This document shows, piece after piece, positions 3,001 through 62,520 of a stretch of 64,000 nucleotides of DNA (position 1 is its first letter; each line of letters opens with the position of its first letter). Below the pieces are notes generated by a model. That model did no database searches and was not told the origin of the DNA. It saw nothing but the letters and a program-made list of their open reading frames with translations. The position numbers and the translations under genes are program-made. Origin of the DNA: Macrostomum lignano (taxonomy: Eukaryota); contig NIVC01001641.1 of the NCBI GenBank assembly GCA_002269645.1, positions 124,001-188,000 on the forward strand. The letters run 5' to 3'.

Positions 3001-6000
3001 GGGTTAGATTGTGGTGAATAGATCACAGGGGATCAGTCTTTGAGATTAGATTGTGGTGAATAGATCACAGGGGAATAGGGGATCAGTCTCTGGGGTTAGA
3101 TTGTGGTGAATAGATCACAGGGCATCAGTCTCTGGGGTTAGATTGTGGTGAATAGATCACAGGGCATCAGTCTCTGAGGTTAGATTGTGGTGAATAGATC
3201 ACAGGGCATCAGTCTCTGGGGTTAGATTGTGGTGAATAGATCACAGGGCATCAGTCTCTGGGGTTAGATTGTGGTGAATAGATCACTGGGCATCAGTCTC
3301 TGGGGTTAGATTGTGGTGAATAGATCACAGGGCATCAGTCTCTGGGGTTAGATTGTGGTGAATAGATCACAGAGCATCAGTCTCTGGGGTTAGATTGTGG
3401 TGAATAGATCACTGGGCATCAGTCTCTGGGGTTAGATTGTGGTGAATAGATCACAGGGCATCAGTCTCTGAGGTTAGATTGTGGTGAATAGATCACAGGG
3501 CATCAGTCTCTGGGGTTAGATTGTGGTGAATAGATCACAGGGCATCAGTCTCTGGGGTTAGATTGTGGTGAATAGATCACAGAGCATCAGTCTCTGGGGT
3601 TAGATTGTGGTGAATAGATCACTGGGCATCAGTCTCTGGGGTTAGATTGTGGTGAATAGATCACTGGGCATCAGTCTCTGGGGTTAGATTGTGGTGAATA
3701 GATCACAGGGCATCAGTCTCTGGGGTTGGATTGTGGTGAATAGATCACTGGGCATCTGTCTCAGGTTAGATTGTGGTGAATAGATCACTGGGCATCAGTC
3801 TCTGGGGTTAGATTGTGTTGAATAGATCACAGGGCATCAGTCTCTGGGGTTAGATTGTGGTGAATAGATCACAGGGCATCAGTCTCTGGGGTTAGATTGT
3901 TATGAATAGATCACAGGGCATCAGTCTCTGGGGTTAGATTGTGGTGGATATATCACAGGGCATCCGTCTCTGGGGTTAGATTGTGGTGAATAGATCACAG
4001 GGGATCAGTCTCTGGGGTTAGATTGTGGTGAATAGATCACAGGGCATCAGTCTCTGGGGTTAGATTGTGGTGAATAGATCACAGGGGATCAGTCTTTGAG
4101 ATTAGATTGTGGTGAATAGATCACAGGGGAATAGGGGATCAGTCTCTGGGGTTAGATTGTGGTGAATAGATCACAGAGCATCAGTCTCTGGGGTTAGATT
4201 GTGGTGAATAGATCACTGGGCATCAGTCTCTGGGTTAGATTGTGGTGAATAGATCACTGGGCATCAGTCTCTGGGTTAGATTGTGGTGAATAGATCACAG
4301 GGCATCAGTCTCTGGGGTTGGATTGTGGTGAATAGATCACTGGGCATCTGTCTCAGGTTAGATTGTGGTGAATAGATCACTGGGCATCAGTCTCTGGGGT
4401 TAGATTGTGTTGAATAGATCACAGGGCATCAGTCTCTGGGGTTAGATTGTGGTGAATAGATCACAGGGCATCAGTCTCTGGGGTTAGATTGTTATGAATA
4501 GATCACAGGGCATCAGTCTCTGGGGTTAGATTGTGGTGGATATATCACAGGGCATCCGTCTCTGGGGTTAGATTGTGGTGAATAGATCACAGGGGATCAG
4601 TCTCTGGGGTTAGATTGTGGTGAATAGATCACAGGGCATCAGTCTCTGGGGTTAGATTGTGGTGAATAGATCACAGGGGATCAGTCTTTGAGATTAGATT
4701 GTGGTGAATAGATCACAGGGGAATAGGGGATCAGTCTCTGGGGTTAGATTGTGGTGAATAGATCACAGGGGATCAGTCTCTGGGGTTAGATTGTGGTGAA
4801 TAGATCACAGGGCATCAGTCTCTGGGGTTAGATTGTGTTGAATAGATCACTGGGCATCAGTCTCTGGGGTTAGATTGTGTTGAATAGATCACTGGGCATC
4901 AGTCTCTGGGGTTAGATTGTGGTGAATAGATCACTGGGCATCAGTCTCTGGGGTTAGATTGTGGTGGATATATCACAGGGCATCCGTCTCTGGGGTTAGA
5001 TTGTGGTGAATCGATCACAGGGGATCAGTCTCTGGGGTTAGATTGTGGTGAATAGATCACAGGGCATCAGTCTCTGGGGTTAGATTGTGGTGAATAGATC
5101 ACAGGGGATCAGTCTCTGGATTAGATTGTGGTGAATAGATCACAGGGGATCAGTCTCTGGGGTTAGATTGTGGTGAATAGATCACAGGGCATCAGTCTCT
5201 GGGGTTAGATTGTGGTGAATAGATCACAGGGCATCAGTCTCTGGGTTAGATTGTGGTGAATAGATCACAGGGCATCAGTCTCTGGGGTTAGATTGTGGTG
5301 AATAGATCACAGGGCATCAGTCTCTGGGGTTAGATTGTGGTGAATAGATCACTGGGCATCAGTCTCTGGGGTTAGATTGTGGTGAATAGATCACTGGGCA
5401 TCAGTCTCTGGGGTTAGATTGTGGTGAATAGATCACTGGGCATCAGTCTCTGGGGTTAGATTGTGGTGAATAGATCACTGGGCATCAGTCTCTGGGGTTA
5501 GATTGTGGTGAATAGATCACTGGGCATCAGTCTCTGGGGTTAGATTGTGGTGAATAGATCACTGGGCATCAGTCTCTGGGGTTAGATTGTGGTGAATAGA
5601 TCACTGGGCATCAGTCTCTGGGGTTAGATTGTGGTGAATAGATCACTGGGCATCAGTCTCTGGGGTTAGATTGTGGTGAATAGATCACAGGGCATCAGTC
5701 TCTGGGGTTAGATTGTGGTGAATAGATCACTGGGCATCAGTCTCTGGGGTTAGATTGTGGTGAATAGATCACAGGGCATCAGTCTCTGGGGTTAGATTGT
5801 GGTGAATAGATCACAGGGCATCAGTCTCTGGGGTTAGATTGTGGTGGATATATCACAGGGCATCAGTCTCTGGGGTTAGATTGTGGTGAATAGATCACAG
5901 GGGATCAGTCTCTGGGGTTAGATTGTGGTGAATAGATCACAGGGCATCAGTCTCTGGGTTAGATTGTGGTGAATAGATCACAGGGGATCAGTCTCTGGAT

Positions 6001-6890
6001 TAGATTGTGGTGAATAGATCACAGGGCATCAGTCTCTGGGGTTAGATTGTGGTGGATATATCACAGGGCATCAGTCTCTGGGTTAGATTGTGGTGAATAG
6101 ATCACAGGGGATCAGTCTCTGGGGTTAGATTGTGGTGAATAGATCACAGGGGATCAGTCTCTGGGTTAGATTGTGGTGAATAGATCACAGGGGATCAGTC
6201 TCTGGGGTTAGATTGTGGTGAATAGATCACAGGGGATCAGTCTCTGGGGTTAGATTGTGGTGAATAGATCACAGGGCATCAGTCTCTGGGTTAGATTGTG
6301 GTGAATAGATCACAGGGCATCAGTCTCTGGGTTAGATTGTGGTGAATAGATCACAGGGCATCAGTCTCTGGGGTTAGATTGTGGTGAATAGATCACAGGG
6401 CATCAGTCTCTGGGGTTAGATTGTGGTGAATAGATCACAGGGCATCAGTCTCTGGGGTTAGATTGTGGTGAATAGATCACTGGGCATCAGTCTCTGGGGT
6501 TAGATTGTGGTGAATAGATCACTGGGCATCAGTCTCTGGGTTAGATTGTGGTGAATAGATCACTGGGCATCAGTCTCTGGGGTTAGATTGTGGTGAATAG
6601 ATCACTGGGCATCAGTCTCTGGGGTTAGATTGTGGTGAATAGATCACTGGGCATCAGTCTCTGGGGTTAGATTGTGGTGAATAGATCACTGGGCATCAGT
6701 CTCTGGGGTTAGATTGTGGTGAATAGATCACTGGGCATCAGTCTCTGGGGTTAGATTGTGGTGAATAGATCACTGGGCATCAGTCTCTGGGGTTAGATTG
6801 TGGTGAATAGATCATAGGGAATCAGTCTCTGGGGTTAGATTGTGGTGAATAGATCACAAGGCATCAGTCTCTGGGGTTAGATTGTGGTGG
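1..6890. repeat. 42-bp satellite array (CACAGGGCATCAGTCTCTGGGGTTAGATTGTGGTGAATAGAT), about 160 copies, continues off the left edge
   Basis: Unit starts at 1 and 43 and recurs with minor variants to about 6890; no ORF in the track over this span. Confidence 0.98.
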
Positions 6891-42887: not shown

Positions 42888-43065
42888 TCTGTCATATAAG
42901 ACTGTGATGTATTCGAACTGGAAGATTAAGAACTCATCTTACGGCTACATTGCGACGTGCTGTACATTTGATAGAATGGCGTCCAGTGACACATAATTCC
43001 TACTTTCAAGTAGTATGGCGAGTTAGCGAGCGATTCGACCTGATTTCACTCCCTGATTTTTACAG

Positions 43066-43243
43066 CCTGCAGCAGATGGCCTCAGCCTACGGCTACCAGC
43101 AGCAAGCGGTAATGTCGCCGGCCAGCCTCATGGCTTTGTCGGCGGCGCCGCAGCTGGCTGGGGGCGCCGGCAATTCGTCCGCTACCGCCACGGCCAGCTT
43201 CCTGGCAGACTACGCCGCCACCGTGGCAGCCGCTCAGCAGTTT

Positions 43244-43276
<33 letters not shown>

Positions 43277-43321
43277 TTATACTCTGGTCTGTCCGACTCT
43301 GCCATGCTGCAGCTCGCTCAG
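43066..43321 (+). CDS. RBM24: RBM24/38 exon 4 (Ala/Gln-rich, poly-Q)
   Basis: tttttacag|C acceptor and CAG|GTGGGT donor; FLADYAATVAAA resembles the RBM24 DY..AAY block. Confidence 0.82.
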
Positions 43322-43581
43322 GTGGGTGACTGGGACAGCGGGCTGGATGCGGTCTGGGGTTCGAGTCACAGAGAAATATTTTCAGCTTACCTCTACCTTT
43401 TTAGAATCTCACCCATCTCACAGGTCTTTATAGCATCTATCTCGCTAGAATCCCACGGCTCTCAACGCAATCTCACCCTTTATCTAATTGGAATATCACC
43501 ATTTATGTTTATGTATGTCTCACCCTTACAGGTACAGCATCTCACTAATGTTTCTCACAGATCTCACCCGTCCCCCATCAG

Positions 43582-43791
43582 GCCTCCTACCTGCCCCAGT
43601 ACTACGCCGCTGCCTCGATGCAGAGCGGCGGCGGCACTGGCGGCCTGCAGAGTCTGGCCGGCGGCGGCGCCTCCACGGTCAGCGTGGCCGGTCAGGGCTC
43701 AGCCTCCTCTGCGGCTGCGGCGGCTGCGGCTGCGGCAGCTGCCGTACAAAACGGCTTCCTACTGACCGGAGCCCAGGAGCGGGCGCAGTAG
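43582..43791 (+). CDS. RBM24: RBM24/38 terminal exon 5
   Basis: ccccatcag|GCC acceptor; ASYLPQYYAAAS...poly-Ala...QERAQ*, resembling the family's DRMQ* ending; 210 nt. Confidence 0.85.
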   Translation, partial: ASYLPQYYAAASMQSGGGTGGLQSLAGGGASTVSVAGQGSASSAAAAAAAAAAAVQNGFLLTGAQERAQ

Positions 43792-43917
43792 CCGCTGGGT
43801 GCTGCCACGGCCGGCCCAGAAAGCCTAAAGTTCATTTTGCAGATTGCATAAGGCTGCTGGGGCAGTCTTCATCGGGTTCAGCTGACTTATTAACTAACTC
43901 GTGTGTACTTTTGTATT

Positions 43918-44657
43918 GATCCTTCAGCGGGTGCCGCTACCCTCTCTGATCCTTCAGCGGGTGCCGCTATCCTCCCTGATCCTTCAGCGGGTGCCGCTAC
44001 CCTCTCTGATCCTTCAGCGGGTGCCGCTATCCTCCCTGATCCTTCAGCGGGTGCCGCTACCCTCTCTGATCCTTCAGCGGGTGCCGCTACCCTCTCTGAT
44101 CCTTCAGCGGGTGCCGCTATCCTCCCTGATCCTTCAGCGGGTGCCGCTACCCTCTCTAATCCTTCAGCGGGTGCCGCTACCCTCTCTGATCCTTCAGCGG
44201 GTGCCGCTACCCTCTCTGATCCTTCAGCGGCTGCCGCTACCCTCTCTGATCCTTCAGCGGGTGCCGCTACCCTCCCTGATCCTTCAGCGGGTGCCGCTAT
44301 CCTCCCTGATTCTTCAGCGGCTGCCGCTACCCTCACTGATCCTTCAGCGGGTGCCGCTACCCTCTCTGATCCTTCAGCGGGTGCCGCTATCCTCCCTGAT
44401 CCTTCAGCGGGTGCCGCTACCCTCTCTAATCCTTCAGCGGGTGCCGCTACCCTCTCTGATCCTTCAGCGGGTGCCGCTACCCTCTCTGATCCTTCAGCGG
44501 CTGCCGCTACCCTCCCTGATCCTTCAGCGGGTGCCGCTACCCTCCCTGATCCTTCAGCGGGTGCCGCTATCCTCCCTGATTCTTCAGCGGCTGCCGCTAC
44601 CCTCCCTGATCCTTCAGCGGGTGCCGCTACCCTCCCTGATCCTTCAGCGGGTGCCGC
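43918..44657. repeat. 30-bp minisatellite (GATCCTTCAGCGGGTGCCGCTACCCTCTCT), about 25 copies, 3' of the RBM stop
   Basis: Exact 30-bp period. Confidence 0.97.
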
Positions 44658-48072: not shown

Positions 48073-49470
48073 TCATTTCCCGCCCGGGGCTCGAATCGGC
48101 AGTCCCTGAATGGCGTCCCTGTACGCCTGCGGCGGCCGCGTCTTTGGCCGGTCGCCCGGGTGCGCCTCGGTGAAGTGCGTGTCCAGAACTTCGCGCGACC
48201 AGTAGGAGCGCCGGCACAGGTGGCAGTGGTGCGGGAACACGCCCAGGTGGTACTGCACAATGTGATCCTTCAGGCTGTTCAAGCTGCTGGAGGAGCTGGT
48301 GCACACTGAGCAGTGGTAGGTCACCCCGCCGAAGTTGCCACGCTTGCGCACCACCCAGCACTTGGCCAGAGGCGCCGGGTCCACCGCCCGGTCCAGCGAG
48401 TCCGGCATCAGCAGCAGCTCCTTGCCGTTCACCATCACGCTGGCTGGCTGGGCGGCCGCCGTCTCGGCGCCTTCCTCTTCATCGTCCTGCTCCTCATCGT
48501 CTTCCTGGGCTTCGGTCTCAGCCTCCTCCTCTTCCTCATCCTCCCCTTCCTCATCGCCAGCCTCTTCCTCCGCTTCGCCGTCTTCGCCGTCTTCCTCAGC
48601 GCCGTCGTCCTCGATAATCTGCATCTCGGCATCGTCAGCATAGTCTTCCTCATCAGCCTCCTCCTCGTTCCCTTCTTCATCGTCTCCAGCCTCCCCAGCC
48701 TCCTCATCATTGACGCCGTTATCAGCTCCGTCCTCGTAATCTTCCTCTTCATCATCTTGTTCCTGGTCTTCTTCTTCCGACATCGATCGGGGCCGCTTCC
48801 TGCTGCCGGAAGAAGAATTGCCAGAGGCCGAGGCAGCTGCGGAGGCGGCGGCGGCGGCAGCGGCAGCGGCGGCTTCTCGACGAGTCTTGGCGGCCGCGAT
48901 GGCGGCGGCGGAGCGCTGCAGAATCCGCTTGGCCTGACTGGACGGCTTGACGTCCACGCGGTTCATGGCGTAGCGATAGGCCGAGTACTGCAGCAGGTGG
49001 AACTCGCGCTGCGGGTGCTCCAGCAGGTGGTGCCGGAACACGTGGTTCCTGACCGCGTACAGCTTGCCACACACGCTGCACTTGTGCCCGGGAATGCGCA
49101 GGTGGTCGCGCACGATGTGGCCCCGGACTGGGCCAACATTGTGGGAGCCGAACTCGCACCAGCTGCAGGTGAACTGGCACCTGCCCGGCGGCAGCGGCTT
49201 CTCCGACTCGTCAGCCTGGATGACGAAACAGGTTGTGGGGATCTGCGGCCGGTCGGACGAGCACTGCATCTCTGGCGGGACGCCCGCGCTGGACGATGTC
49301 GAATCCTCCGCGTCCTCGCCTGGCTCGTCGGCTGAGGCCACGGAGGTCACGAGTTCCTGGTCGGAGCCGGCGCCCGTGGTTTTGATTTTTATTCGAAGAC
49401 CTTTATTGGGCGAGGCGGCGATGCTGCCGGTGGCCGAGGCAGGCGACACCGAGGCTGCGGGGGTGCCGCT
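48073..49470 (-). CDS. Multi-zinc-finger protein, terminal exon (two C2H2 finger pairs flanking a ~100-aa acidic tract; RKRPR NLS-like motif)
   Basis: ccgttccag|AGC acceptor; 1398 nt to the stop; CSWC..HIVRDH, CSVC..HHLLEH, CSVC..HIVQYH, CHLC..HFTEAH. Confidence 0.9.
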   Translation of the reverse strand, partial: SGTPAASVSPASATGSIAASPNKGLRIKIKTTGAGSDQELVTSVASADEPGEDAEDSTSSSAGVPPEMQCSSDRPQIPTTCFVIQADESEKPLPPGRCQFTCSWCEFGSHNVGPVRGHIVRDHLRIPGHKCSVCGKLYAVRNHVFRHHLLEHPQREFHLLQYSAYRYAMNRVDVKPSSQAKRILQRSAAAIAAAKTRREAAAAAAAAAASAAASASGNSSSGSRKRPRSMSEEEDQEQDDEEEDYEDGADNGVNDEEAGEAGDDEEGNEEEADEEDYADDAEMQIIEDDGAEEDGEDGEAEEEAGDEEGEDEEEEEAETEAQEDDEEQDDEEEGAETAAAQPASVMVNGKELLLMPDSLDRAVDPAPLAKCWVVRKRGNFGGVTYHCSVCTSSSSSLNSLKDHIVQYHLGVFPHHCHLCRRSYWSREVLDTHFTEAHPGDRPKTRPPQAYRDAIQGLPIRAPGGK

Positions 49471-49489: not shown

Positions 49490-50152
49490 TGGATGATTAG
49501 GGTGGATTCTCGGGTAGATTTAGGGTGGATTCTCGGGTAGATTTAGGGTGGATTCTCAGCTAGATTTAGGGTAGATTCTCAGATAGATTTAGGGTAGATT
49601 CTCAGCTAGATTTTGGGTAGATTCTCAGCTAGATTTTGGGTAGATTCTCAGCTAGATTTAGGGTAGATTCTCAGCTAGATTTAGGGTAGATTCTCAGCTA
49701 GATTTAGGGTAGATTCTCAGCTAGATTTAGGGTATATTCTCAGCTAGATTTAGGGTATATTCTCAGCTAGATTTAGGATAGATTCTCAGATAGATTTAGG
49801 GTAGATTCTCAGATAGATTTAGGGTATATTCTCAGCTAGATTTAGGGTATATTCTCAGATAGATTTAGGGTATATTCTCAGCTAGATTTAGGGTAGATTC
49901 TCAGCTAGATTTAGGGTAGATTCTCAGATAGATTTAGGGTATATTCTCAGCTAGATTTAGGGTAGATTCTCAGATAGATTTAGGGTATATTCTCAGCTAG
50001 ATTTAGGGTCGATTCTCTGAGATTTAGGGCAGATTTTTAGGTAGATTTAGGGTCGATTCCAAGGTAGATTTAGGGTAGATTCTCAGCTAGATTTAGGGTC
50101 GATTCCAAGGTAGATTTGAGGTTGATTTCCAGGTAAATTAAGGGTGGATTTG
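49490..50152. repeat. 23-bp minisatellite (TAGATTTAGGGTAGATTCTCAGC), zinc-finger gene intron
   Basis: Tandem units. Confidence 0.93.
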
Positions 50153-50226: not shown

Positions 50227-50706
50227 AGAGGCGGCTCTCGCGGGTCGGAGCGGCACCATGCTGGGAAATGCGGCATCATAAGAGGCGGTGGACGCAGCGG
50301 CAGCGGCGGAAACGGCAGCTGCAGACGAAACAGCCGACAAGGCCTCGGTGGCGGCGCCGCCCCTGCCGAGTTTTTCCTCGTTCGGTCCGACCGTGCCCTT
50401 CCACTTGAGTCTGGCCAGCTGGATGAGCAGCGGGTCGGGCAGCAGGCGGTTGTCGTCTCTGCTCAGGCGGCTGGCGTGCAGGCAGGCCGTCTTGAACCTG
50501 TCCGGCACCTTGGCGTGCACGCCCAGGATGTGCTTGCGAATGTCGCCCATGCCGTGCGGGCTGGAGGCGGAGCAGCCGGAGCAGCGGAACACCCGCTTGT
50601 TATCCGACACTGTGCGAGTCACCGCCACCTTGTAGGTGCTGTAGTACTCCATCTTCTCACGCAGAATCTCCATGGTTTCCGAGTCGCAAGCTCCCTCAAT
50701 GAGGAC
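50227..50706 (-). CDS. Zinc-finger protein exon (extended finger module 4)
   Basis: gtgttcag|GTC acceptor and TCT|GTGAGT donor; 480 nt, phase 0/0; CSGC...DIRKHILGVH. Confidence 0.88.
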
Positions 50707-50746
50707 CTGAACACAGCGCCAAAGGCGGATGGGAAACCTTTGTTCA

Positions 50747-51192
50747 GATGGGTCAGTGGGTCCGATAGGGACTGGGGATAAGTCAGCGTTGGATCAGGGA
50801 CTGTCGGTGGGTCAGAATGGGTCAGTTTTGGATCAGGGACTGTCGGTGGGTCAGGACAGGATGGGTCAGTCTTAGATCAGGGACTGTCGGTGGGTCAGGA
50901 CAGGATGGATCAGTCTTAGATCAGGGACTGTCGGTGGGTCAGGACAGGATGGGTCAGTCTTAGATCAGGGACTGTCGGTGGGTCAGGATGGGTCAGTGTT
51001 GGATCGGAGACTTCGGTTGGTCAGGATGGGTCAGTGTTGGATCAGGGACTGTCGGTGGGTCAGGATATGTCAGTCTTGAATTAGGGGATGTCGGTGGGTC
51101 AGGATAGGTCAGTGTTGGATCAGGGACTGTCGGTGGGTCAGGATAGGTCAGTGTTGGATCAGGGAATGTCGGTGGGTCAGGATGGGTCAGTG
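50747..51192. repeat. ~39-44-bp minisatellite (GGGTCAGTGTTGGATCAGGGACTGTCGGTGGGTCAGGAT), zinc-finger gene intron
   Basis: Tandem units. Confidence 0.9.
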
Positions 51193-51255
51193 TCGAAATT
51201 CGGCAGGAAATAATTCCCAAGACAAGTGAGCGCGCGCGATACGTCAGACTCTCAC

Positions 51256-51548
51256 CTGCAGAGCGCTAAACGAATACGGCAGTTCGACCGCCCGCTCCAG
51301 CTCGCCTTCTTCTTCCAGAACCCGCAGGCTGGCCAGCCGCTGCTCCTGGGTGGCCACCTCATGGGGCTGGATTGGCGGCTCCGACCTGCCCAGGCCGCCG
51401 CCCAGCATGGTCGGCGTTGAAGTTGACAGGCCGCCAGCCGACGAGGCGCCGGCGGGCGACGCGGTCGGCGATGATGCGGCGGCGCGGTGCTCGGAGTCGG
51501 CAATGAGGCCCAGGGCGGCTGTTGAAGCGAATTGGTGGATGCGTGAGG
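51256..51548 (-). CDS. Zinc-finger protein exon (linker and start of module 4)
   Basis: tcccag|CC acceptor and CAG|GTGAGA donor; 293 nt, phase 1/0; ends VELPYSFSALQ. The exact acceptor is ambiguous by 6 nt. Confidence 0.8.
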
Positions 51549-51550
51549 CT

Positions 51551-51837
51551 GGGACTGGGAGGCTGACCCAGCAACTGAGGATCTGGGAGGCTGACCCAGC
51601 AACTGGGGATCTGGGAGGCTGGCCCAGCAGCTGGGGATCTGGGAGGCTGGTCTAGCAGCTGGGGATCTGGGAGGCTGGCCCAGCAGCTGGGGATCTGGGA
51701 GGCTGGCCCAGCAGCTGGGGATCTGGGAGGCTGGCCCAGCAACTGGGGATCTGAGAGGCTGGCCCAGCAACTGGGGATCTGGGAGGCTGGCCCAGCAGCT
51801 GGGGATCTGGGAGGCTGGCCCAGCAACTGGGGATCTT
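51551..51837. repeat. 28-bp minisatellite (GGGGATCTGGGAGGCTGGCCCAGCAGCT), zinc-finger gene intron
   Basis: About 10 copies abutting the splice acceptor. Confidence 0.93.
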
Positions 51838-51925
51838 TCAATTTACAAGTGTGCATTACTAGGCTCCATAAAGCTACGAATAGGAAAAGGCCGGTCACAA
51901 AAACACAGCGTGAGCAGCAGCGCAC

Positions 51926-52553
51926 CGGATGAGCTGGACTTGAGCAGCTTGCCGGTCTCGCCAGGCCACACCGGGTGCGAGCTGTACAGCAGGGAGGAGA
52001 ACTCCGGCTGCTGCTGCTTCTTCCCCGCATCGTCGCCGCGCTGCTGCGATTCGCCCGTCAGCATCGAGCAGGAGTCCTCGCCAGGGCCGCAGCCGCTCTC
52101 GTCCAGTCGAGAGTTCTGGTTGCTAAGCGCGCTGTCGTCAAGGGAACGAGGCGCGGAAGCAAAATTCGTGGAAGCCTTGGCCGGCCGCTCGTTGGCCAGC
52201 CGGAGCAGCATCTCGTCCGCGTACAGATGCCAGTTGTTCTCCCGCGAGATGCGGCTGGCCTGACAGCAGGTGGTCAGCATCTCGTGCGAGATTCTGGCGT
52301 GGACGCCCATCACGTGACGCCTGGCGTCGGCCAGGGTGCTGGGGCGGACGCTGTTGCCCGGCCGGCGCACCGTGTGGAAGACGCGGCCGCAGATGCACTT
52401 GTACGCCACGGTTTTTCCGCGGGCAATCTGCCTGACCAGCTGGTACTTGGAGTAGGCCCGCATCTTCGCCACCAGACTGTCCTGGTGCGGCCGGTCGCTG
52501 GCGTCCCGGAGCAGATGGCGGAGCACCGCCTCAGAGAAGGGCAGGTTGATCAC
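51926..52553 (-). CDS. Zinc-finger protein exon (extended finger module 3)
   Basis: ccgccag|GTG acceptor and G|GTGCGC donor; 628 nt; YKCICG...DARRHVMGVH. Confidence 0.86.
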
Positions 52554-52609
52554 CTGGCGGGGAGGCGACGGACAGACACTCCTAGAGTCCGTTCTGCTTA
52601 TTGACATTC

Positions 52610-52942
52610 AGTCTGGCACTCTTAGATTCAGTCTGACACTCTCAGATTCAGTCTGGCACTCTCAGATTCAGTCTGGCACTCTCAGATTCAGTCTGGCACT
52701 CTCCGATTCAGTCTGGCACTCTCAGATTCAGTCTAGCACTCTCAGATTCAGTCTGGCACTCTTAGATTCAGTCTGGCACTCTCCGATTCAGTCTGGCACT
52801 CTCCGATTCAGTCTAGCACTCTCAGATTCAGTCTGGCACTCTTAAATTCAGTCTGGCACTCTTAGATTCAATCTGGCACTCTCAGATCCAGTCTGGCACT
52901 CTTAGATTCAGTCTGGCACTCTTAAATTCAGTCTGGCACTCT
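52610..52942. repeat. 20-bp minisatellite (CTCAGATTCAGTCTGGCACT), zinc-finger gene intron
   Basis: Tandem units. Confidence 0.93.
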
Positions 52943-53067
52943 CCTATTCAATATTTCAGTCTCCTATCTAATGTCATTTTTTCGTTTGATCTGGCACTGA
53001 TACTCAATCTGTCACTATTCTATTCAATCTGTCACTCCGCACACCAGAAAATCTCGCGAGTTCGCAC

Positions 53068-53616
53068 CTCCTCCTCGTCAACCCCGTCGGCCTCCTCAAA
53101 GTGGCTGGGGTTCTGGCCGAAGTGCAGCATGGCGCCTTTCCCAGCCGTATCGGTGAAGCCCGTCGATGAAGAAGCGGTGACAGCGGAACCCGCCGCAGTG
53201 ACGCCGTCCACCGAGGACGGCGTTGACGGCGGCTTCAGCTGTTGAGACAAGCTGGACGGAGGCTCCAGCACCGCGGCAGCGTCCGGGTCAAGCATCATCA
53301 CATCCTCGGCGTCCTCAGACGAACCGGCGGCCCTGGGGTCGGACTGGCGAACCCGAACGAATTCCCTAGCGAGCCGGATGAGCTTGTCGTCGGAGAGCAG
53401 GGTGTACTCAGCCGGGTCCAGGCGGGACGCCTGCAGGCAGTAGCGGAAGTGCTTGGTTGAAATGCCGCAGTGGGCGCCCAGGATGTGCTTGCGAACGTCG
53501 GCCAGAGCGTGCGGCGAAGCGTAATTGCAGGAGCCGCACAGGTACTTCTTGCCGTTGCGGGCATCCACTATCACGTACAGAGTGGAGTAGGTGGCCATCT
53601 TGGCGATGAGGTACTC
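53068..53616 (-). CDS. Zinc-finger protein exon (extended finger module 2)
   Basis: cactgcag|GAG acceptor and GAG|GTGCGA donor; 549 nt, phase 0/0; CGSC...DVRKHILGAH. Confidence 0.88.
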
Positions 53617-53665
53617 CTGCAGTGCGGAGGGGAAGCTGGACTTGGGACTGCGGTGTCTTAAGATG

Positions 53666-53705
53666 TGCCTGCCTGCCTGCCTGTCTGTCTGTCTGTCTGT
53701 CTTAG

Positions 53706-53762
<57 letters not shown>

Positions 53763-53806
53763 GACCGTCTGTCCGTCTCTCTTTAATGTCTTTCTGTCTG
53801 TCTTAG

Positions 53807-53859
<53 letters not shown>

Positions 53860-53975
53860 TTAATGTCTTTCTGTCTGTCTGTCTGTCTTAGTGTCTGTCC
53901 ATCTGTCTGTCTGTCTGTCTGTCTGTCTGCCTGTCTGTCTGTCTGCCTGTCTGTCCCTCTGTCTTAGTGTCTTGG
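53666..53975. repeat. (TCTG)n microsatellite, zinc-finger gene intron
   Basis: Tetranucleotide runs. Confidence 0.93.
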
Positions 53976-54048
53976 TGCCGTACTGTCTGTCTGTTGGTGT
54001 GTCTTTAAATGCAAACCATCAAACATCCAGAAGCAGCCAATCAATCAC

Positions 54049-54186
54049 CTGCGACTCCCTGCTGAAGTGCTGGGTCAGCTGCCTGAGCACGGCGGTACTG
54101 TACGGCAGCGGCACCCGGTGGCGAAAGGCGTCGATGCGCACCGGCCGTGGCAGGCTGCGCTCGTTCTCGGGCTCGGATTTGCGAAC
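54049..54186 (-). CDS. Zinc-finger protein exon (start of module 2)
   Basis: ttaccgcag|GTT acceptor and CAG|GTGATT donor; 138 nt, phase 0/0; RVPLPYSTAVLRQL. Confidence 0.82.
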
Positions 54187-54311
54187 CTGCGGTAAGCGGC
54201 AGATTATAATGAGCGAGTGTACTACTGCCGCTTGGCGGATGTAGTAGTATGCGAGGGACATGAAAAATGCAGTATACAGTGAAACAGTGAATTTTTGGCG
54301 GGGTTGATCAG

Positions 54312-55198
54312 AGATTATTGGGTAGGGTTGTTGAGTAGACTATTTGATAGGGTTGAGTAGACTGTTGGGTAGGATTGGGTAGATTATTGGCTGGGGTTGG
54401 GTAGACTACTGGATAGGGTTGGGTAGACTGTTGGGTAGGGTTGAGTAGACTGTTGGGTAGGGTTGAGTAGACTGTTGGGTAGGGTTGGGTAGACTATTAG
54501 GTGGGGTTGGGTAGACAATTGGGTGGGGTTGGGTAGACTGTTGGGTAGGTTTGGGTAGACTATTGGGTGGGGTTGGGTAGACAATTGGGTGGGGTTGGGT
54601 AGACTATTGGGTGGGGTTGGGTAGACTATTGGGTGGGGTTGGGTAGACTATTGGGTGGGGTTGGGTAGACTATTGGGTGGGGTTGGGTAGACGATCAGGT
54701 GGGGTTGGGTAGACTATTGGATGGGGTTGGGTAGACTGTTGGGTGGGGTTGGGTAGACTGTTGGGTGGGGTTAGGTAGACTTTTGGGTGGGGTTGGGTAG
54801 ACTGTTGGGTAGGTTTGGGTAGACTATTGGATGGGGTTGGGTAGACTATTGGGTGGGGTTGGGTAGACGATCGGGTGGGGTTGGGTAGACTATTGGATGG
54901 GGTTGGGTAGACTGTTGGGTGGGGTTGGGTAGACTGTTGGTGGGGTTAGATAGACTTTTGGGTGGGGTTGGGTAGACTATTGGGTGGGGTTGGGTAGACT
55001 ATTGGGTGGGGTTGGGTAGACTGTTGGGTAGGTTTGGGTAGACTATTGGGTGGGGTTGGGTAGACGATTGGGTGGGGTTGGGTAGACGATTGGGTGGGGT
55101 TGGGTAGACTGTTGGGTAGGTTTGGGTAGACTATTGGGTGGGGTTGGGTAGACTATTGGGTGGGGTTGGGTAGACGATTGGGTGGGGTTAGGTAGACC
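54312..55198. repeat. 22-bp G-rich minisatellite (GGGTAGACTATTGGGTGGGGTT), zinc-finger gene intron
   Basis: About 40 copies. Confidence 0.95.
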
Positions 55199-55201
55199 CA
55201 C

Positions 55202-55789
55202 CAGGGTGATGGCGCCGGCTTTGTTGCTACCCGGAACCGGCTGAGTGAACTTCAGGCAATCTCGCACGGTGTCTCTCGGTATGCCCAGATGAACGCTAAG
55301 CAGATGCCGTTTAAAATCGCCCAGGCCGTAGGGAAAGGCCCGCTTGCATTCCGGGCACTCCGGGATGCGGCGCTGGTTCTCGCGGCCCAGGATTTTCACT
55401 CGATAGCCGCAGAACAGCTTCATCTTGGCGATGAGGGTCTCCGTGGCGGCCGTAGCCGGCCTGGCGGCCCTGTAGGCCTCCTCGTGGAACGGGAAACTCA
55501 CGTACTCGGTGGTTTCGCTGGACACGTCTAGACGGGGCACTTTTGTACCGTCGGCTGTTGCTGGACCGGCTGCGGCGGCATTGGCGGCGGCTGGTGACGC
55601 AGAGATGAGGGAGGCGAGCGCTGAGCTGGGCTGCTCATCCAGTGGCCGCTTCCGAACCAGCTGCAGGAGCTGCTGCTGCTGCTGAGGCTGCGGCTGTGGC
55701 GGCGGTGGCGGCGGCGGCGGCAGCTCCTCAACGAGCGTCTTGGCCAGCATTACGCGAGAAGTGCGAATGTCTTCTTGGAGCAGAGTGGC
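55202..55789 (-). CDS. Zinc-finger protein exon (Pro/Gln tract and extended finger module 1)
   Basis: ttttatttcag|GCC acceptor and CTG|GTGGGT donor; 588 nt, phase 0/0; CPEC...DFKRHLLSVH. Confidence 0.86.
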
Positions 55790-55819
55790 CTGAAATAAAA
55801 GTTGAAATTTGAAACTTTC

Positions 55820-56192
55820 CACTGAGGATCAGGGGAGGATTCCACTGAGGATCAGGGGTGGATTTCACTGAGGATCAGGGGTGGATTTCACTGAGGATCA
55901 GGGGAGGATTCCACTGAGAATCTCGGGAGCGGATTCCACTGAAGATCAGGGGAGGATTCCACTGATGATCAGGGGCGGATTCCACTGATGATCAGGGGCG
56001 GATTCCACTGAGGATCAGGGGAGGATTCCACTGATGATCAGGGGCGGATTCCACTGATGATCAGGGGCGGATTCCACTGAAGATCAGGGGAGGATTCCAC
56101 TGAGGATCAGAGGCGGATTCCACTGAGAATCTCGGGAGCGGATTCCATTGAAGATCAGGGGCGGATTCCACTGATGATCAGGGGCGGATTCC
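55820..56192. repeat. 23-bp minisatellite (TTCCACTGAGGATCAGGGGCGGA), zinc-finger gene intron
   Basis: Tandem units. Confidence 0.92.
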
Positions 56193-59914: not shown

Positions 59915-60312
59915 GTGAGAATCGCCCTTAATAGCCTTGAGAATCGCCCTCAATAGCCTTAAGAATCGCCTCCCACCTCCAGGACAGCCTTTAGAATCGG
60001 CCCAATCAGGACAGCCTTGAGAAGCGCCCCACTCAGGACAGCCTTGAGAAGCGCCCCACTCAGGACAGCCTTGAGAAGCGCCCCACTCAGGACAGCCTTG
60101 AGAATCGCCCCCCTCCAGTACAGCCTTGAGAATCGCCCTCAATAGCCTTAAGAATCGCCTCCCACCTCCAGTACAGCCTTGAGAATCGCCCCCAGTACAG
60201 CTTTAAGAATCGCCCCCCAGTAAAGCTTGAGAATCGCTCTATTCCCCCCAGGACAGCCTTGAGAATCGCCCCCCCCCCAGGACAGCCTTGAGAATCGCCC
60301 TCAACAGCCTTG
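59915..60312. repeat. Degenerate ~25-bp minisatellite (CAGCCTTGAGAATCGCCC...), zinc-finger gene intron
   Basis: gagaatcgccc core repeated. Confidence 0.88.
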
Positions 60313-60379
60313 AATCACGCCATGACTGCCAGACACTGAGCTAATTAGCATACCGTAAGCAAATGAAAGCTCATCTCAC

Positions 60380-60885
60380 CTCGGGACTGTCAGGATGCGC
60401 AGACGCAATGTGCTCCAGAATCAATGCAGCATCCGTGGCCGCGGCGCCGCACTCTGAGCAGTGGCACAGTGTATAAGCAACAACGCTGGCTCCAGCCTCC
60501 CCAGCATCATCAGATTGCCTAGCGAAGCCACTGCCACGACAGTCGGAGCAGAGATGCCGCAGGAATTTGCCCCAATCCACGGTGGCGAACTGGCAGGCCG
60601 GGCAGCGCAGGCCGAACACGGGCGGTCCGGCGGGTTTCTCCGGATCGGCGGCATCGGATTTGACAGTCAGACTGGCTGACGGCGGGTCGGCGAGAGGCGG
60701 CAGGCTCAGATAAGACACTGGCCGGGCAGCGCACGCCAGGTAGTCAATGCTGGCTATGGCCGTGGCCGGCTGGCTCGGGTGCCGCTTGGCCAGATGGCGC
60801 TGCACTGCCAGCTTGCTGGCGCTCTTCACCAGACAGCCGGGCACCTCGCAATGGTACAGCGGCCGGACGCTCTCCTCCAGGTGGG
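60380..60885 (-). CDS. Zinc-finger protein exon (three C2H2/C2HC-like fingers)
   Basis: ttcgcccag|CC acceptor and GAG|GTGAGA donor; 506 nt, phase 1/0; CEVPGC..HLAKRH, CPAC..HLCSDC, CSEC..HIASAH. Confidence 0.86.
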
Positions 60886-60974
60886 CTGGGCGAAGTAATC
60901 AGGCATGTACTTTTAGATGGAATCGGGGCTATCGGTATAGAGAATATGATTGATTGTGCTCGACTCTTAGGCTT

Positions 60975-62022
60975 AAAGATGAGGGGAGATTCTCAGTGCT
61001 TAAGACCAGGGGCGATTCTCAGTGCTTGAGATTAGGGGCGATTCTCAGTGCTTGAGACTAGGGGAGATTCTCAGTGCTTGAGACTAGGGGTGATTCTCAG
61101 TGCTTGAGACTAGGGGTGATTCTCAGTGCTTGAGACTAGGGGTGATTCTCAGTGCTTGAGACTAGGGGTGATTCTCAGTGCTTGAGACTAGGGGTGATTC
61201 TCAGTGCTTGAGACTAGGGGTGATTCTCAGTGCTTGAGACTAGGGGAGATTCTCAGTGCTTGAGACTAGGGGTGATTCTCAGTGCTTGAGACTAGGGGTG
61301 ATTCTCAGTGCTTGAGACTAGGGGTGATTCTCAGTGCTTGAGACTAGGGGTGATTCTCAGTGCTTGAGACTAGGGGAGATTCTCAGTGCTTGAGACTAGG
61401 GGTGATTCTCAGAGTGCTTGAGACTAGGGGAGATTCTCAGTGCTTGAGACTAGGGGTGATTCTCAGTGCTTGAAACAAGGGGTGATTCTCAGTGCTTGAG
61501 ACTAGGGGAGATTCTCAGTGCTTGAGACTAGGGGAGATTCTCAGTGCTTGAGATTGGGAACGATTCTTAATGCTTGAGATTCTCAGGGTGATTCTCAGTG
61601 CTTGAGATTAGAGGCGATATCAAAGGTAGAGAATAGGGGCGATTCTCAAAGGTAGAGAATAGGGGCGATACTCAAAGGTAGAGAATAGGGGCGATACTCA
61701 AAGGTAGAGAATAGGGGCGATACTCAAAGGTAGAGAATAGGGGCGATTCTCAAAGGTAGAGAATAGGGGCGATTCTCAAAGGTAGAGAATAGGGGCGATT
61801 CTCAAAGGTAGAGAATAGGGGCGATACTCAAAGGTAGAGAATAGGGGCGATACTCAAAGGTAGAGAATAGGGGCGATACTCAAAGGTAGAGAATAGGGGC
61901 GATTCTCAGATTCTCAAAGGTAGAGAATAGGGGCGATACTCAAAGGTAGAGAATAGGGGCGATTCTCAGATTCTCAAAGGTAGATAATAGGGACGATTCT
62001 CAAAGGTAGATAATAGGGGCGA
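60975..62022. repeat. Compound array: 26-bp unit (GATTCTCAGTGCTTGAGACTAGGGGT) then ~26-bp unit (GCGAT(A/T)CTCAAAGGTAGAGAATAGGG), zinc-finger gene intron
   Basis: Unit switch at about 61620. Confidence 0.93.
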
Positions 62023-62090
62023 ACCAGTTGATTTCCAGAGCATCAGAGGCCAAGCCCAGTGCAGGCCGGTGCTGGCAAGAAGAGGCTCAC

Positions 62091-62520
62091 CTGCAAGTTG
62101 CACGGCGCTGCCGAACACCTGGCCGCAGCAGCCGCAGGCGCAGTCCTCCATCCGGCCGCTGTGCAGTCCGTGGCAATGATCGAGAAAGGCGGTCTTGTCC
62201 TCCAGATAGGCTGAGCAGTGAGGACACGGGTACAGGTCCTGGGCGGTGGCTGCGGAGAAGTGACGCAGCTGGTGCTCGCCAATGTCAGCAGCGGGAACCT
62301 GGGTGAGGCAGTAGGGACACACGGACTCGACAGCGTTGTGCTCTGCGGCCGCGTGCTTGCCCAGCTGGCTGGGGTCCCAGGTTGAGTAAGCCAGGCAGAA
62401 GCCGCAGACACAGCAGGCGCTAGCAGACTCGAGTCGGTGCGCCAGCTGCTCATATTTGGCGTGCTGCGAGTCCTTGTCGAGCAGGGCGGCCCGCTGCTTG
62501 CGGAGCTTTGACACTGTCAG
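62091..62520 (-). CDS. Zinc-finger protein, most 5' exon identified (three to four fingers); gene continues upstream
   Basis: catcatccag|CTG acceptor and G|GTGAGC donor; 430 nt, phase 0/1; CGFC..HAAAEH, CPYC..HQLRH, CPHC..HCHGLH. Confidence 0.85.

What the first reader, a model, noticed from the sequence alone, without database searches (positions are those of the whole stretch)
50400..55510. Four copies of an unrecognised ~110-aa extended zinc-finger module in a large nuclear protein
By-eye alignment of the spliced minus-strand protein shows a repeated module much larger than a C2H2 finger. The consensus is [VI]x[LF]P[YF][SH]..A/V.[LY][RQ] - helix - [ED]xLxxKMxx[YF]xxY - beta segment - CxxC (CxC in copy 3) - [LM][GA]DxR/K[KR]H[ILV][LM][GS][VA]H - x10 - C(L)xASR[LI] - L..D..L[IL].LA. 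Copy 1: VSFPFHEEAYR..ETLIAKMKLFCGY..CPEC..GLGDFKRHLLSVH..DC (no ASR tail). Copy 2: VPLPYSTAVLR..EYLIAKMATY..CGSC..ALADVRKHILGAH..YCLQASRL..LSDDKLIRLA. Copy 3: INLPFSEAVLR..DSLVAKMRAYSKY..CIC..TLADARRHVMGVH..CCQASRI..YADEMLLRLA. Copy 4: VELPYSFSALQ..EILREKMEYYSTY..CSGC..GMGDIRKHILGVH..ACLHASRL..LPDPLLIQLA. A fifth potential metal ligand (Cys about 10 residues after HxxxxH) is kept in all four. The conservation spans introns (copies 2 and 4 are split across exons), which independently supports the gene model. I do not recognise this as a named Pfam family. It may be a lineage-specific zinc-binding fold for chromatin, nucleic-acid or protein binding (inference).
Basis: partly seen in the sequence, partly recalled or inferred. 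Interest (0 to 1): 0.78.

Follow-up and report, generated by a model that had tools for sequence, protein, structure and literature searches.

The report
Flatworm-only extended zinc-finger domain, four copies
A flatworm (Macrostomum) gene really does carry four copies of a roughly 115-residue domain built around an ordinary C2H2 zinc finger; the domain occurs only in flatworm proteins among those whose source organism is recorded, matches no described family or solved structure, and has no known function.

Summary
On the minus strand, a multi-exon gene (about 62.5 to 48.1 kb) encodes four mutually similar modules of 110-125 aa (pairwise BLASTP E 2e-6 to 2e-23). Every full-length ortholog also has four. 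The window is Macrostomum lignano or nearly identical to it.

Each module has a classical C2H2 core: Cx2C-x13-Hx4H, with CxC plus an 11-aa insert in copy 3. Conserved flanks surround the core. AlphaFold2 folds the whole module as one compact domain (pLDDT 94.8 and 92.1; pTM 0.86 and 0.84).

Nothing known covers the whole module:
- No Pfam family reaches threshold.
- No PDB sequence is significant (best E 0.17).
- No PDB fold matches (best E 0.3, TM below 0.3).

A profile search of 1.84 billion representative proteins found 51 hits. Every hit with a recorded organism is a flatworm (macrostomid, trematode, cestode or monogenean), and all are annotated only as "C2H2-type domain-containing" or "hypothetical".

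It is Cys in only 62% of 142 unique modules, whereas the four C/H ligands are 100% conserved.

Function is unknown. The invariant small residues at DNA-reading positions, the long linkers and the basic charge argue for four independent binding domains rather than a canonical DNA-reading array.

Verdict: a new variant of a known kind, of moderate interest.

The parts
55202..55507 (-). Module copy 1 (EYVSFPFHEE...CPEC...GLGDFKRHLLSVH...DCLKFTQ...AITL). It lies in one exon (exon A, about 55790-55202). Zinc ligand codons are CPEC at 55357-55346 and HLLSVH at 55306-55289. The C-terminal tail is divergent.
   Evidence: Exon A ends at a phase-0 donor, CTG|GTGGGT, at 55202.
54049..54120 (-). Module copy 2, N-terminal part (HRVPLPYSTAVLRQLTQHFSRESQ), at the end of exon B (54186-54049).
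   Evidence: The acceptor is CGCAG|GTT at 54186 and the donor is CAG|GTGATT at 54049, both phase 0.
53359..53616 (-). Module copy 2, C-terminal part (EYLIAKMATY...CGSC...ALADVRKHILGAH...YCLQASRL...LIRLAREF), at the start of exon C (53616-53068). Ligand codons are at 53538-53527 and 53487-53470.
   Evidence: AF2 model of this copy: pLDDT 94.8, pTM 0.86.
52185..52553 (-). Module copy 3 (VINLPFSEAVLR...CIC + 11-aa insert...TLADARRHVMGVH...CCQASRI...LLRLANER), wholly within exon D (52553-51926). Ligand codons are at 52397-52389 and 52316-52299.
   Evidence: AF2 model: pLDDT 92.1, pTM 0.84, with the same order of secondary-structure elements as copy 2.
51256..51294 (-). Module copy 4, N-terminal part (RAVELPYSFSALQ), at the end of exon E (51518-51256).
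   Evidence: The donor is CAG|GTGAGA at 51256, phase 0. The start of exon E is inferred: acceptor at 51518 joined to the phase-1 donor at 51926.
50404..50706 (-). Module copy 4, C-terminal part (VLIEGACDSETMEILREKMEYYSTY...CSGC...GMGDIRKHILGVH...ACLHASRL...LIQLARLK), at the start of exon F (50706-50227). Ligand codons are at 50583-50572 and 50532-50515.
   Evidence: The same join is present in the UniProt model P0013.
48073..49449 (-). Downstream exon of the same gene. It carries two pairs of ordinary C2H2 fingers (CSWCEF...HIVRDH / CSVCGK...HHLLEH and CSVCTS...HIVQYH / CHLCRR...THFTEAH), an RKRPRS motif and an acidic (D/E) tract of about 130 aa, then ends at a stop codon.
   Evidence: It is colinear with the C-termini of P0008 and P0013. 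The module HMM weakly matches the homologous C-terminal fingers of orthologs with its core only: profile 49-92, E about 0.002.
60371..62514 (-). Upstream exons of the same gene (ORFs 62514-61966 and 60844-60371). They encode the N-terminal cluster of degenerate C2H2 fingers (LESASACCVCGFC..., PGCLVKSASKLAVQRH..., CHCSECGAAATD...HIASAH).
   Evidence: The region is colinear with the N-termini of P0008, P0002 and P0021. Exact exon ends were not determined.

Best explanation
The four repeats are four copies of a real, autonomously folding domain of about 115 residues. The domain is a classical C2H2 zinc finger (beta-hairpin with Cx2C, helix with Hx4H) elaborated on both sides.

Order of elements in the domain:
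- An N-terminal strand with the L-P-[YF]-S turn.
- Two helices, the second carrying L..KM..Y.
- Two further strands that extend the finger's sheet.
- The finger helix, LADxR[KR]HxLGxH.
- Two C-terminal helices, C.QASRL and L..D..L..LA.

The protein is a large multi-zinc-finger protein, at least about 1,400 aa in full-length orthologs. The four-module architecture is conserved one-to-one between Macrostomum and parasitic flatworms, so the four-fold duplication predates their divergence.

Inferred mechanism (not shown): each module binds one zinc through its two Cys and two His. The zinc-stabilised, mostly basic domain acts as an independent recognition unit. Four of them on long flexible linkers would give multivalent binding to chromatin or nucleic acid (or to an acidic partner), rather than reading DNA triplets as a tandem finger array does. 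The fifth Cys is a packing residue on a helix, not a ligand.
For: Shown:
- The four copies are significantly similar to each other. Exactly four are found in each full-length ortholog.
- Copy-to-copy orthology: window copy 2 is 47-65% identical to the copy 2 of parasites, but 14-38% identical to other copies.
- Among 142 unique modules from 78 proteins, C57, C60, H74 and H79 are 100% conserved and D70 is 95% conserved.
- AF2 gives pLDDT 94.8 / pTM 0.86 for copy 2 and 92.1 / 0.84 for copy 3. Both have the same order of elements, with the flanks inside the confident fold.
- Sub-threshold Pfam and PDB sequence matches fall only on the C2H2 core.
- No full-length match exists in Pfam, PDB sequences or PDB folds.
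- There are only 51 hits in 1.84 billion representatives. All hits with a recorded organism are flatworms.

Supporting the inferred mode of action:
- Helix positions -1, +2, +3 and +6 are A/G/T, A/G, invariant D and K/R in all four copies and in all species.
- No TGEKP-type linker occurs anywhere in the window.
- The modules are separated by low-complexity linkers, from about 20 residues (between copies 1 and 2) to 90-120 residues.
- Copies 2-4 carry net charge +3 to +15 and pI 8.6-10.9.
- Published survey: single C2H2 fingers with extra secondary-structure elements are common and lean towards protein-protein interaction (PMC12774644).
Against: - Zinc binding, fold and ligand are all predictions. 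AF2 was run without metal, and only secondary structure and confidence were available to me, not coordinates.
- Copy 3 has CxC, an unusual knuckle for a C2H2 site.
- Copy 1 is not consistently basic (net -2 to +7) and has a divergent tail, so the four copies may not share one ligand.
- Basic charge fits nucleic-acid binding, but the literature on elaborated single fingers favours protein binding. The choice between the two is open.
- No library of predicted structures of cellular proteins (AlphaFold DB), InterPro, PANTHER or HHpred search was available. A described relative outside Pfam and the PDB cannot be excluded.
- Several divergent hits (P0031, P0032, P0043, P0057) come from sources with no recorded organism, so restriction to flatworms is not proven.
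Confidence: 0.8

Rival explanations
1. The modules are protein-protein interaction or self-association domains. They would recruit a conserved partner or dimerise, as elaborated single C2H2 fingers do in other animals, and would not contact nucleic acid.
For: - The fingers are isolated, with extra strands and helices and no canonical linkers.
- The putative DNA-reading positions are invariant.
- Published work shows dimerisation by single C2H2 domains with an adjacent beta-strand. It also predicts that elaborated single fingers are more frequent than clustered ones and lean to protein binding (PMC12774644).
- Whole-surface conservation is very high in copy 2: up to 65% identity between Macrostomum and trematodes.
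Against: - Copies 2-4 are strongly basic, which fits nucleic-acid binding at least as well.
- No multimer prediction or partner could be tested here.
- The CGx-hydrophobic motif of the dimerising Drosophila class is not a conserved feature of these modules.
Confidence: 0.35
2. The module is merely a divergent member of an already described extended finger family, such as BED, ZNF451/ZNF462-type or WRKY-GCM1-like fingers, that sequence methods fail to link. In that case there is no novelty.
For: - The ligand pattern Cx2C...Hx4H preceded by conserved aromatic residues (Y..Y.V) resembles the BED layout.
- Sub-threshold Pfam hits occur to zf-C2H2_7th_ZNF462 (E 0.005) and Zf-C2H2_ZNF451_C (E 0.09).
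- Distant unnamed relatives (P0043 group) carry faint precomputed zf-BED hits.
- Foldseek lists a Hermes BED domain and ARS2/SERRATE at E 1-4.
Against: - No module reaches E below 1 against zf-BED.
- Every sub-threshold hit covers only about 20-30 residues of the core.
- The best Foldseek TM-scores are 0.2-0.28, with RMSD 4.5-12 A.
- The flanking LP[YF]S, KM and ASR/L..LA elements match nothing.
Confidence: 0.12
3. The repeat is an artefact of a wrong gene model or lies in a decaying gene copy, so the four-module protein is not made from this locus.
For: - No RNA data were available.
- The exon D/E join is uncertain. The UniProt M. lignano models need one C fewer near 51505 than the window has.
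- The M. lignano paralog model P0008 has only copies 3 and 4.
Against: - All module-bearing frames are open.
- All other junctions are clean phase-0 GT..AG junctions.
- An in-frame D/E join exists in the window, 51926 to 51518.
- The four-module order is reproduced in more than 15 flatworm species.
- Long exact runs are shared with M. lignano protein models.
Confidence: 0.04

Closest known systems
Classical C2H2 zinc finger (Pfam clan C2H2-zf; zf-C2H2 PF00096, zf-C2H2_4 PF13894)
   Same: Both have two Cys on a beta-hairpin and two His on the following helix. Here the pattern is Cx2C-x13-Hx4H, 100% conserved, with the predicted beta-beta-alpha arrangement around it. Weak sequence matches fall exactly on this core.
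   Different: - The module is about four times larger (about 115 aa against about 25-30 aa), with five helices and four strands in one domain.
- The spacing is x13 rather than the usual x12, and copy 3 has CxC plus an 11-aa insert.
- No member reaches a Pfam gathering score (best 19.5 bits against a cut-off of 27).
- There are no TGEKP linkers.
- DNA-reading positions are small and invariant.
Single C2H2 fingers with adjacent extra secondary structure. Examples: the Drosophila IMZF 'CGx-hydrophobic' dimerising fingers (PMC12774644); the N-terminally extended SWI5 finger 1 (from my own knowledge, not tested here).
   Same: In both, an isolated finger has additional strands and/or helices that pack on the core and create a new surface. 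Such fingers are reported to be common and biased towards non-DNA functions.
   Different: - Those extensions are one strand or one helix within about 20 residues. Here there are about 50 residues before and about 40 after the core.
- The IMZF class is specific to Diptera and is defined by a CGx-hydrophobic motif, which is not conserved here.
- Dimerisation was not tested for the flatworm module.
BED finger (Pfam zf-BED PF02892)
   Same: The domain is a Cx2C...Hx3-5H site preceded by conserved aromatic positions, is larger than a plain finger, and often occurs as isolated copies. Faint zf-BED hits are on record for the distant P0043 group.
   Different: - No flatworm module matches zf-BED at E below 1.
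- The structural match to the Hermes BED domain is negligible: E 4.3, TM 0.20, 42 columns.
- The C-terminal ASR and L..LA helices have no BED counterpart.
ZFP-1 / ZFP-1-1, the published 'flatworm-specific' C2H2 regulators (PMC5927768)
   Same: These are also C2H2 proteins restricted to Platyhelminthes and conserved from macrostomids to flukes and tapeworms.
   Different: The ZFP-1 family has three tandem canonical fingers with QRSNLQR and RKDHLxR recognition helices. Neither motif occurs in any frame of the window, and the architecture is unrelated.

Membership tests
Classical C2H2 zinc finger (zf-C2H2 clan) | Ligand pattern C-x2-4-C ... H-x3-5-H | tested here: met
   The pattern is Cx2C-x13-Hx4H in copies 1, 2 and 4. 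All four ligand columns are 100% conserved in 142 unique modules. Copy 3 has CxC, outside the usual x2-4 range.
Classical C2H2 zinc finger (zf-C2H2 clan) | Beta-hairpin followed by an alpha-helix around the ligands | tested here: met
   AF2 copy 2: strands 50-53 and 59-60, helix 64-75 carrying both His. Copy 3: strands 47-52 and 58-60, helix 74-85. This is a prediction, not an experiment.
Classical C2H2 zinc finger (zf-C2H2 clan) | Score above the curated Pfam cut-off for a C2H2 model | tested here: not met
   The best result is zf-C2H2_4 at 19.5 bits (E 0.0016) against a cut-off of 27. Only 6 of 27 modules match zf-C2H2_4 at E below 1, and only 1 of 27 matches zf-C2H2 PF00096 (E 0.86).
Classical C2H2 zinc finger (zf-C2H2 clan) | Binds one zinc ion | not testable with these tools
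   This needs metal analysis of recombinant protein.
Tandem DNA-reading C2H2 array (Krueppel/Zif268 type) | Adjacent fingers joined by about 7-residue TGEKP-like linkers, with variable residues at helix positions -1, 2, 3 and 6 | tested here: not met
   No TGE[KR]P occurs in any frame of the window. Modules are separated by low-complexity linkers from about 20 residues (copies 1-2) to 90-120 residues. Positions -1, +2, +3 and +6 are A/G/T, A/G, D and K/R in all copies.
BED finger (PF02892) | Significant match to the zf-BED profile or fold | tested here: not met
   zf-BED is absent from the hits of all 27 modules at E up to 1. Foldseek to the Hermes BED domain gives E 4.3 and TM 0.20.
[quoted passage not shown] | Three tandem C2H2 fingers with QRSNLQR and RKDHLxR helices (PMC5927768) | tested here: not met
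   Neither motif occurs in any of the six frames of the window. The architecture differs.
CGx-hydrophobic dimerising single C2H2 (IMZF class) | Conserved CGx-hydrophobic motif on a strand adjacent to the finger; dimer formation | tested here: not met
   No such conserved motif appears in the module alignment. The class is reported as specific to Diptera. Dimerisation itself is not testable here.

The most novel reading that the evidence does not exclude
The module is a previously undescribed protein domain with its own fold topology: a zinc-centred alpha/beta domain that evolved from a C2H2 finger at the base of, or before, the Platyhelminthes. The four-module protein would be an essential flatworm-restricted chromatin or RNA regulator. 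Because it is absent from vertebrate hosts yet strongly conserved in schistosomes, liver flukes and tapeworms, it could be a lineage-specific handle on flatworm biology.
Probability: 0.35. Interest if true: 0.65.

Novelty: new variant of a known kind. Interest (0 to 1): 0.5.

Why it matters
The finding defines a clean, testable domain in a protein family that is annotated only as "C2H2-type domain-containing" or "hypothetical" in every flatworm genome examined. It has sharp boundaries, invariant residues, confident models and four copies per protein.

It is conserved from free-living Macrostomum to Schistosoma, Clonorchis, Opisthorchis, Paragonimus, Fasciola, Hymenolepis and Spirometra. It was not found with a recorded organism outside the phylum.

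It also adds a large example to the emerging picture that isolated C2H2 fingers are often cores of bigger domains that do not read DNA. Its biological importance depends on the function of the protein, which is unknown.

Tried and rejected
- Pfam scans of the ORF pieces, five full-length orthologs and all 27 aligned modules gave only sub-threshold C2H2-type hits on the core.
- PDB sequence searches, with phmmer on the 828-aa protein and a profile of 27 modules, gave nothing significant.
- Foldseek of two independent AF2 models against the PDB gave a best E of 0.3-0.5 and TM below 0.3.
- I tried to identify the organisms behind divergent or partial hits (P0031, P0032, P0043, P0057). Cluster look-ups, contig look-ups and a homology search returned only records with no organism recorded, from ENA and Logan.
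- Literature searches for Mlig027039 (the locus tag of the M. lignano paralog P0008) and for a described flatworm-specific domain of this kind found none. I also searched for orthologs that carry a gene name and found only generic names.
- I considered identity with the published flatworm-specific ZFP-1 family and rejected it.
- I considered the fifth Cys as a ligand and rejected it on conservation.
- I considered exon duplication as the origin of the repeats. The two module-splitting introns are at non-homologous positions, so the gene structure gives no support for it.

Full report
**Where and what**

The window is flatworm DNA. The spliced protein shares exact runs of 46-121 residues with UniProt models of Macrostomum lignano, P0001 (A0A1I8HX04) and P0013 (A0A1I8FQ97). 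The lineage is Platyhelminthes, Rhabditophora, Macrostomorpha.

The finding lies in a minus-strand gene that runs from about 62.5 kb to 48.07 kb.
- N-terminal exons (ORFs 62514-61966 and 60844-60371) encode degenerate C2H2 fingers.
- Six exons between 55.8 and 50.2 kb carry the four modules.
- A last large exon (49449-48073) carries two pairs of ordinary C2H2 fingers, an RKRPRS motif and an acidic tract of about 130 residues.

**Gene model**

I read the junctions directly.
- Exon A ends at 55202 (CTG|GTGGGT).
- Exon B is 54186-54049.
- Exon C is 53616-53068.
- Exon D starts at 52553.
- Exon E ends at 51256.
- Exon F is 50706-50227.

All of these junctions are phase-0 GT..AG. The D/E join is the only uncertain one. 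In the window, the phase-1 donor at 51926 and the acceptor at 51518 give an open frame (...KLLKSSSS-AALGLIADSEHR...). The UniProt models instead read ...KLLNRPGLIADSEHR, which requires one C fewer near 51505. They are therefore built on a slightly different copy or allele.

The joins inside copies 2 and 4 are colinear with uninterrupted ortholog sequences. The copy-4 join is present verbatim in P0013. No RNA data were available.

The four modules are:
- Copy 1: 55507-55202.
- Copy 2: 54120-54049 plus 53616-53359.
- Copy 3: 52553-52185.
- Copy 4: 51294-51256 plus 50706-50404.

Pairwise BLASTP among the copies gives E from 2e-6 (copies 1 and 3) to 2e-23 (copies 2 and 4), at 25-41% identity. An HMM of the four window copies finds exactly four modules in each full-length ortholog.

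Copies are orthologous one-to-one across species. Window copy 2 is 47-65% identical to the copy 2 of parasitic species, but 14-38% identical to other copies. The four-fold architecture is therefore older than the split between Macrostomorpha and Neodermata.

**Anatomy of the module**

I aligned 142 unique modules from 78 proteins to the profile.
- The two Cys and two His are 100% conserved.
- The Asp three residues into the finger helix is 95% conserved.
- The Met of L..KM..Y is 87% conserved.
- The Pro of LP[YF]S is 75% conserved.
- The Arg of ASR is 74% conserved.

The metal site is Cx2C-x13-Hx4H. Copy 3 has CxC and an 11-residue insert in every species.

It is missing from the copy 1 of cestodes, and from copies 1 and 4 of the second trematode paralog. 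In the copy 4 of parasites it is displaced by three residues (AAAMHCSRL). It sits in a predicted helix (80-89 of copy 2). I read it as a small packing residue, not a ligand.

**One domain, not a finger with conserved tails**

AlphaFold2 on the 27-module alignment folds copy 2 with mean pLDDT 94.8 and pTM 0.86. The elements are strand 2-6, helices 11-17 and 23-36, strands 40-44 and 50-53, finger helix 64-75, and helices 80-89 and 102-116.

Copy 3 gives pLDDT 92.1 and pTM 0.84, with the same order of elements. The insert lies in a lower-confidence loop. Only confidence values and secondary structure were returned, so I could not check the zinc geometry.

**Comparison with what is known**

- Pfam (copy dated 2025): no family reaches threshold for the ORF pieces, five full-length orthologs or any of the 27 modules. 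The best hits are zf-C2H2_4 (19.5 bits against a cut-off of 27), zf-C2H2_7th_ZNF462 (E 0.005) and Zf-C2H2_ZNF451_C (E 0.09). All fall on the roughly 25-residue core.
- PDB sequences: nothing for the protein. For the profile, the best E is 0.17-0.4, to MP42, ZNF512, ZBTB17 and a consensus finger, again on the core only.
- PDB folds: the best Foldseek E is 0.48 and 0.30, with TM at most 0.28. C2H2 proteins (Kaiso, ZFP568), ARS2/SERRATE and a Hermes BED domain appear only as short local matches at E 1-5.
- The published flatworm-specific ZFP-1 family is unrelated. It has three tandem canonical fingers with QRSNLQR and RKDHLxR helices, and neither motif occurs in the window.
- A 2026 study shows that single C2H2 fingers with extra strands can dimerise. 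It also shows that elaborated single fingers are widespread and lean towards protein interaction (PMC12774644). That is the closest concept. Its extensions are far smaller, and its defining motif is absent here.

**Distribution**

The profile was scored against all 1.84 billion representative proteins. It found 51 proteins at E up to 1e-3, 32 at 1e-10 and 21 at 1e-30.

Every hit with a recorded organism is a platyhelminth:
- Macrostomid: Macrostomum.
- Trematodes: Schistosoma (many species), Heterobilharzia, Opisthorchis, Clonorchis, Paragonimus, Calicophoron, Echinostoma, Fasciolopsis and Dicrocoelium. The later homology search added Trichobilharzia and Fasciola.
- Cestodes: Mesocestoides, Hymenolepis, Rodentolepis and Spirometra. 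The later homology search added Schistocephalus.
- Monogeneans: Cichlidogyrus and Protopolystoma.

Names are only "C2H2-type domain-containing protein", "Zinc finger C2H2", "hypothetical" or "unnamed". Trematodes have two paralogs: in Calicophoron these are P0098 and P0020, and in Paragonimus P0099 and P0021.

Two very divergent four-module proteins (P0031, P0032) and a group with a half-module (P0043, P0046 and P0057; profile positions 21-86) come from assemblies with no organism recorded. Restriction to flatworms is therefore well supported but not proven. Hits below about 1e-6 match only the finger core.

**How it probably works (inference)**

- The residues at the canonical DNA-reading positions of the finger helix (-1, +2, +3, +6) are A/G/T, A/G, invariant Asp and K/R. 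They are the same in all four copies and all species.
- There are no TGEKP linkers.
- The modules are separated by low-complexity linkers, from about 20 residues between copies 1 and 2 to 90-120 residues elsewhere.

This is not how a triplet-reading array is built.

Copies 2-4 are basic (net +3 to +15, pI 8.6-10.9). Copy 1 is not consistently so.

My best reading is four independent zinc-stabilised recognition domains on flexible tethers, giving multivalent binding to chromatin or nucleic acid. The main rival is a protein-binding or dimerising role. I cannot separate the two with the tools at hand.

**Verdict**

It is wrong on the fifth ligand, and untested on nuclear localisation and function.

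Because the metal site is an ordinary C2H2 site, I class this as a new variant of a known kind rather than a new kind. Interest is moderate. It is a well-defined, deeply conserved, undescribed domain in medically relevant parasites, but as yet it has no function.

Noticed in passing
window 49497-50150, 50782-51193, 51551-51836, 52606-52943, 53669-53964, 54312-55197, 55817-56192, 59933-60300, 60982-62022: Every intron of the gene is almost filled by its own minisatellite, different in each intron. Periods are 20-39 bp, plus a (CTGT)n run, with 10-54 copies at 80-94% matches. Several give long spurious ORFs such as PNPTQQSTQPHPIVY repeats.
   Followed up: partly
window 1-47000: The rest of the window is also dominated by unrelated tandem arrays. 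Positions 1-6889 are 164 copies of a 42-mer. There are at least 18 more arrays of 0.5-1.9 kb with periods of 10-43 bp. This explains the strong local GC and AT skews in the composition profile.
   Followed up: partly
window about 51500-51520 and 51926-51940: The UniProt M. lignano models read ...KLLNRPGLIADSEHR across the exon D/E join. That reading needs one C fewer than the window has (GGGCCTCATT). The window keeps the frame only with a different donor (51926, phase 1). This suggests the window is a different allele or duplicate copy from the annotated one.
   Followed up: partly
P0008 / P0014 (M. lignano paralog BOX15_Mlig027039g1): A second M. lignano gene, 53-56% identical, is modelled with only modules 3 and 4. 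In that model the N-terminal finger region is fused directly to the ...LHFGQNASHFE...EEE segment that precedes module 3. This is either a real two-module paralog or a model that skips exons.
   Followed up: no
L001 3001-4830 (P0043), P0046, P0057, P0086-P0088: Long ENA metagenome contigs of 80-170 kb, with no organism recorded, carry intronless ORFs of about 600 aa. These contain several isolated fingers, one half-module (helix + strand + C2H2, profile 21-86) and faint zf-BED / zf-C2H2-SPIN-DOC hits. Neighbouring ORFs are on the same strand and have no Pfam hits.
   Followed up: partly
L002 485-3214 (P0032) and P0031: Two very divergent four-module proteins come from RNA assemblies with no organism recorded. 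Module E-values are 1e-9 to 1e-14 when searched against only seven sequences. They keep the four-module order, so the architecture extends to lineages not yet identified.
   Followed up: partly
window 42950-43765 (+): A plus-strand ORF of 271 aa has a poly-Q run (QQFQQQQQQQQQQQLY) and Ala/Ser-rich low complexity, just upstream of a 30-bp minisatellite (43917-44657). It may be an exon of a neighbouring gene.
   Followed up: no
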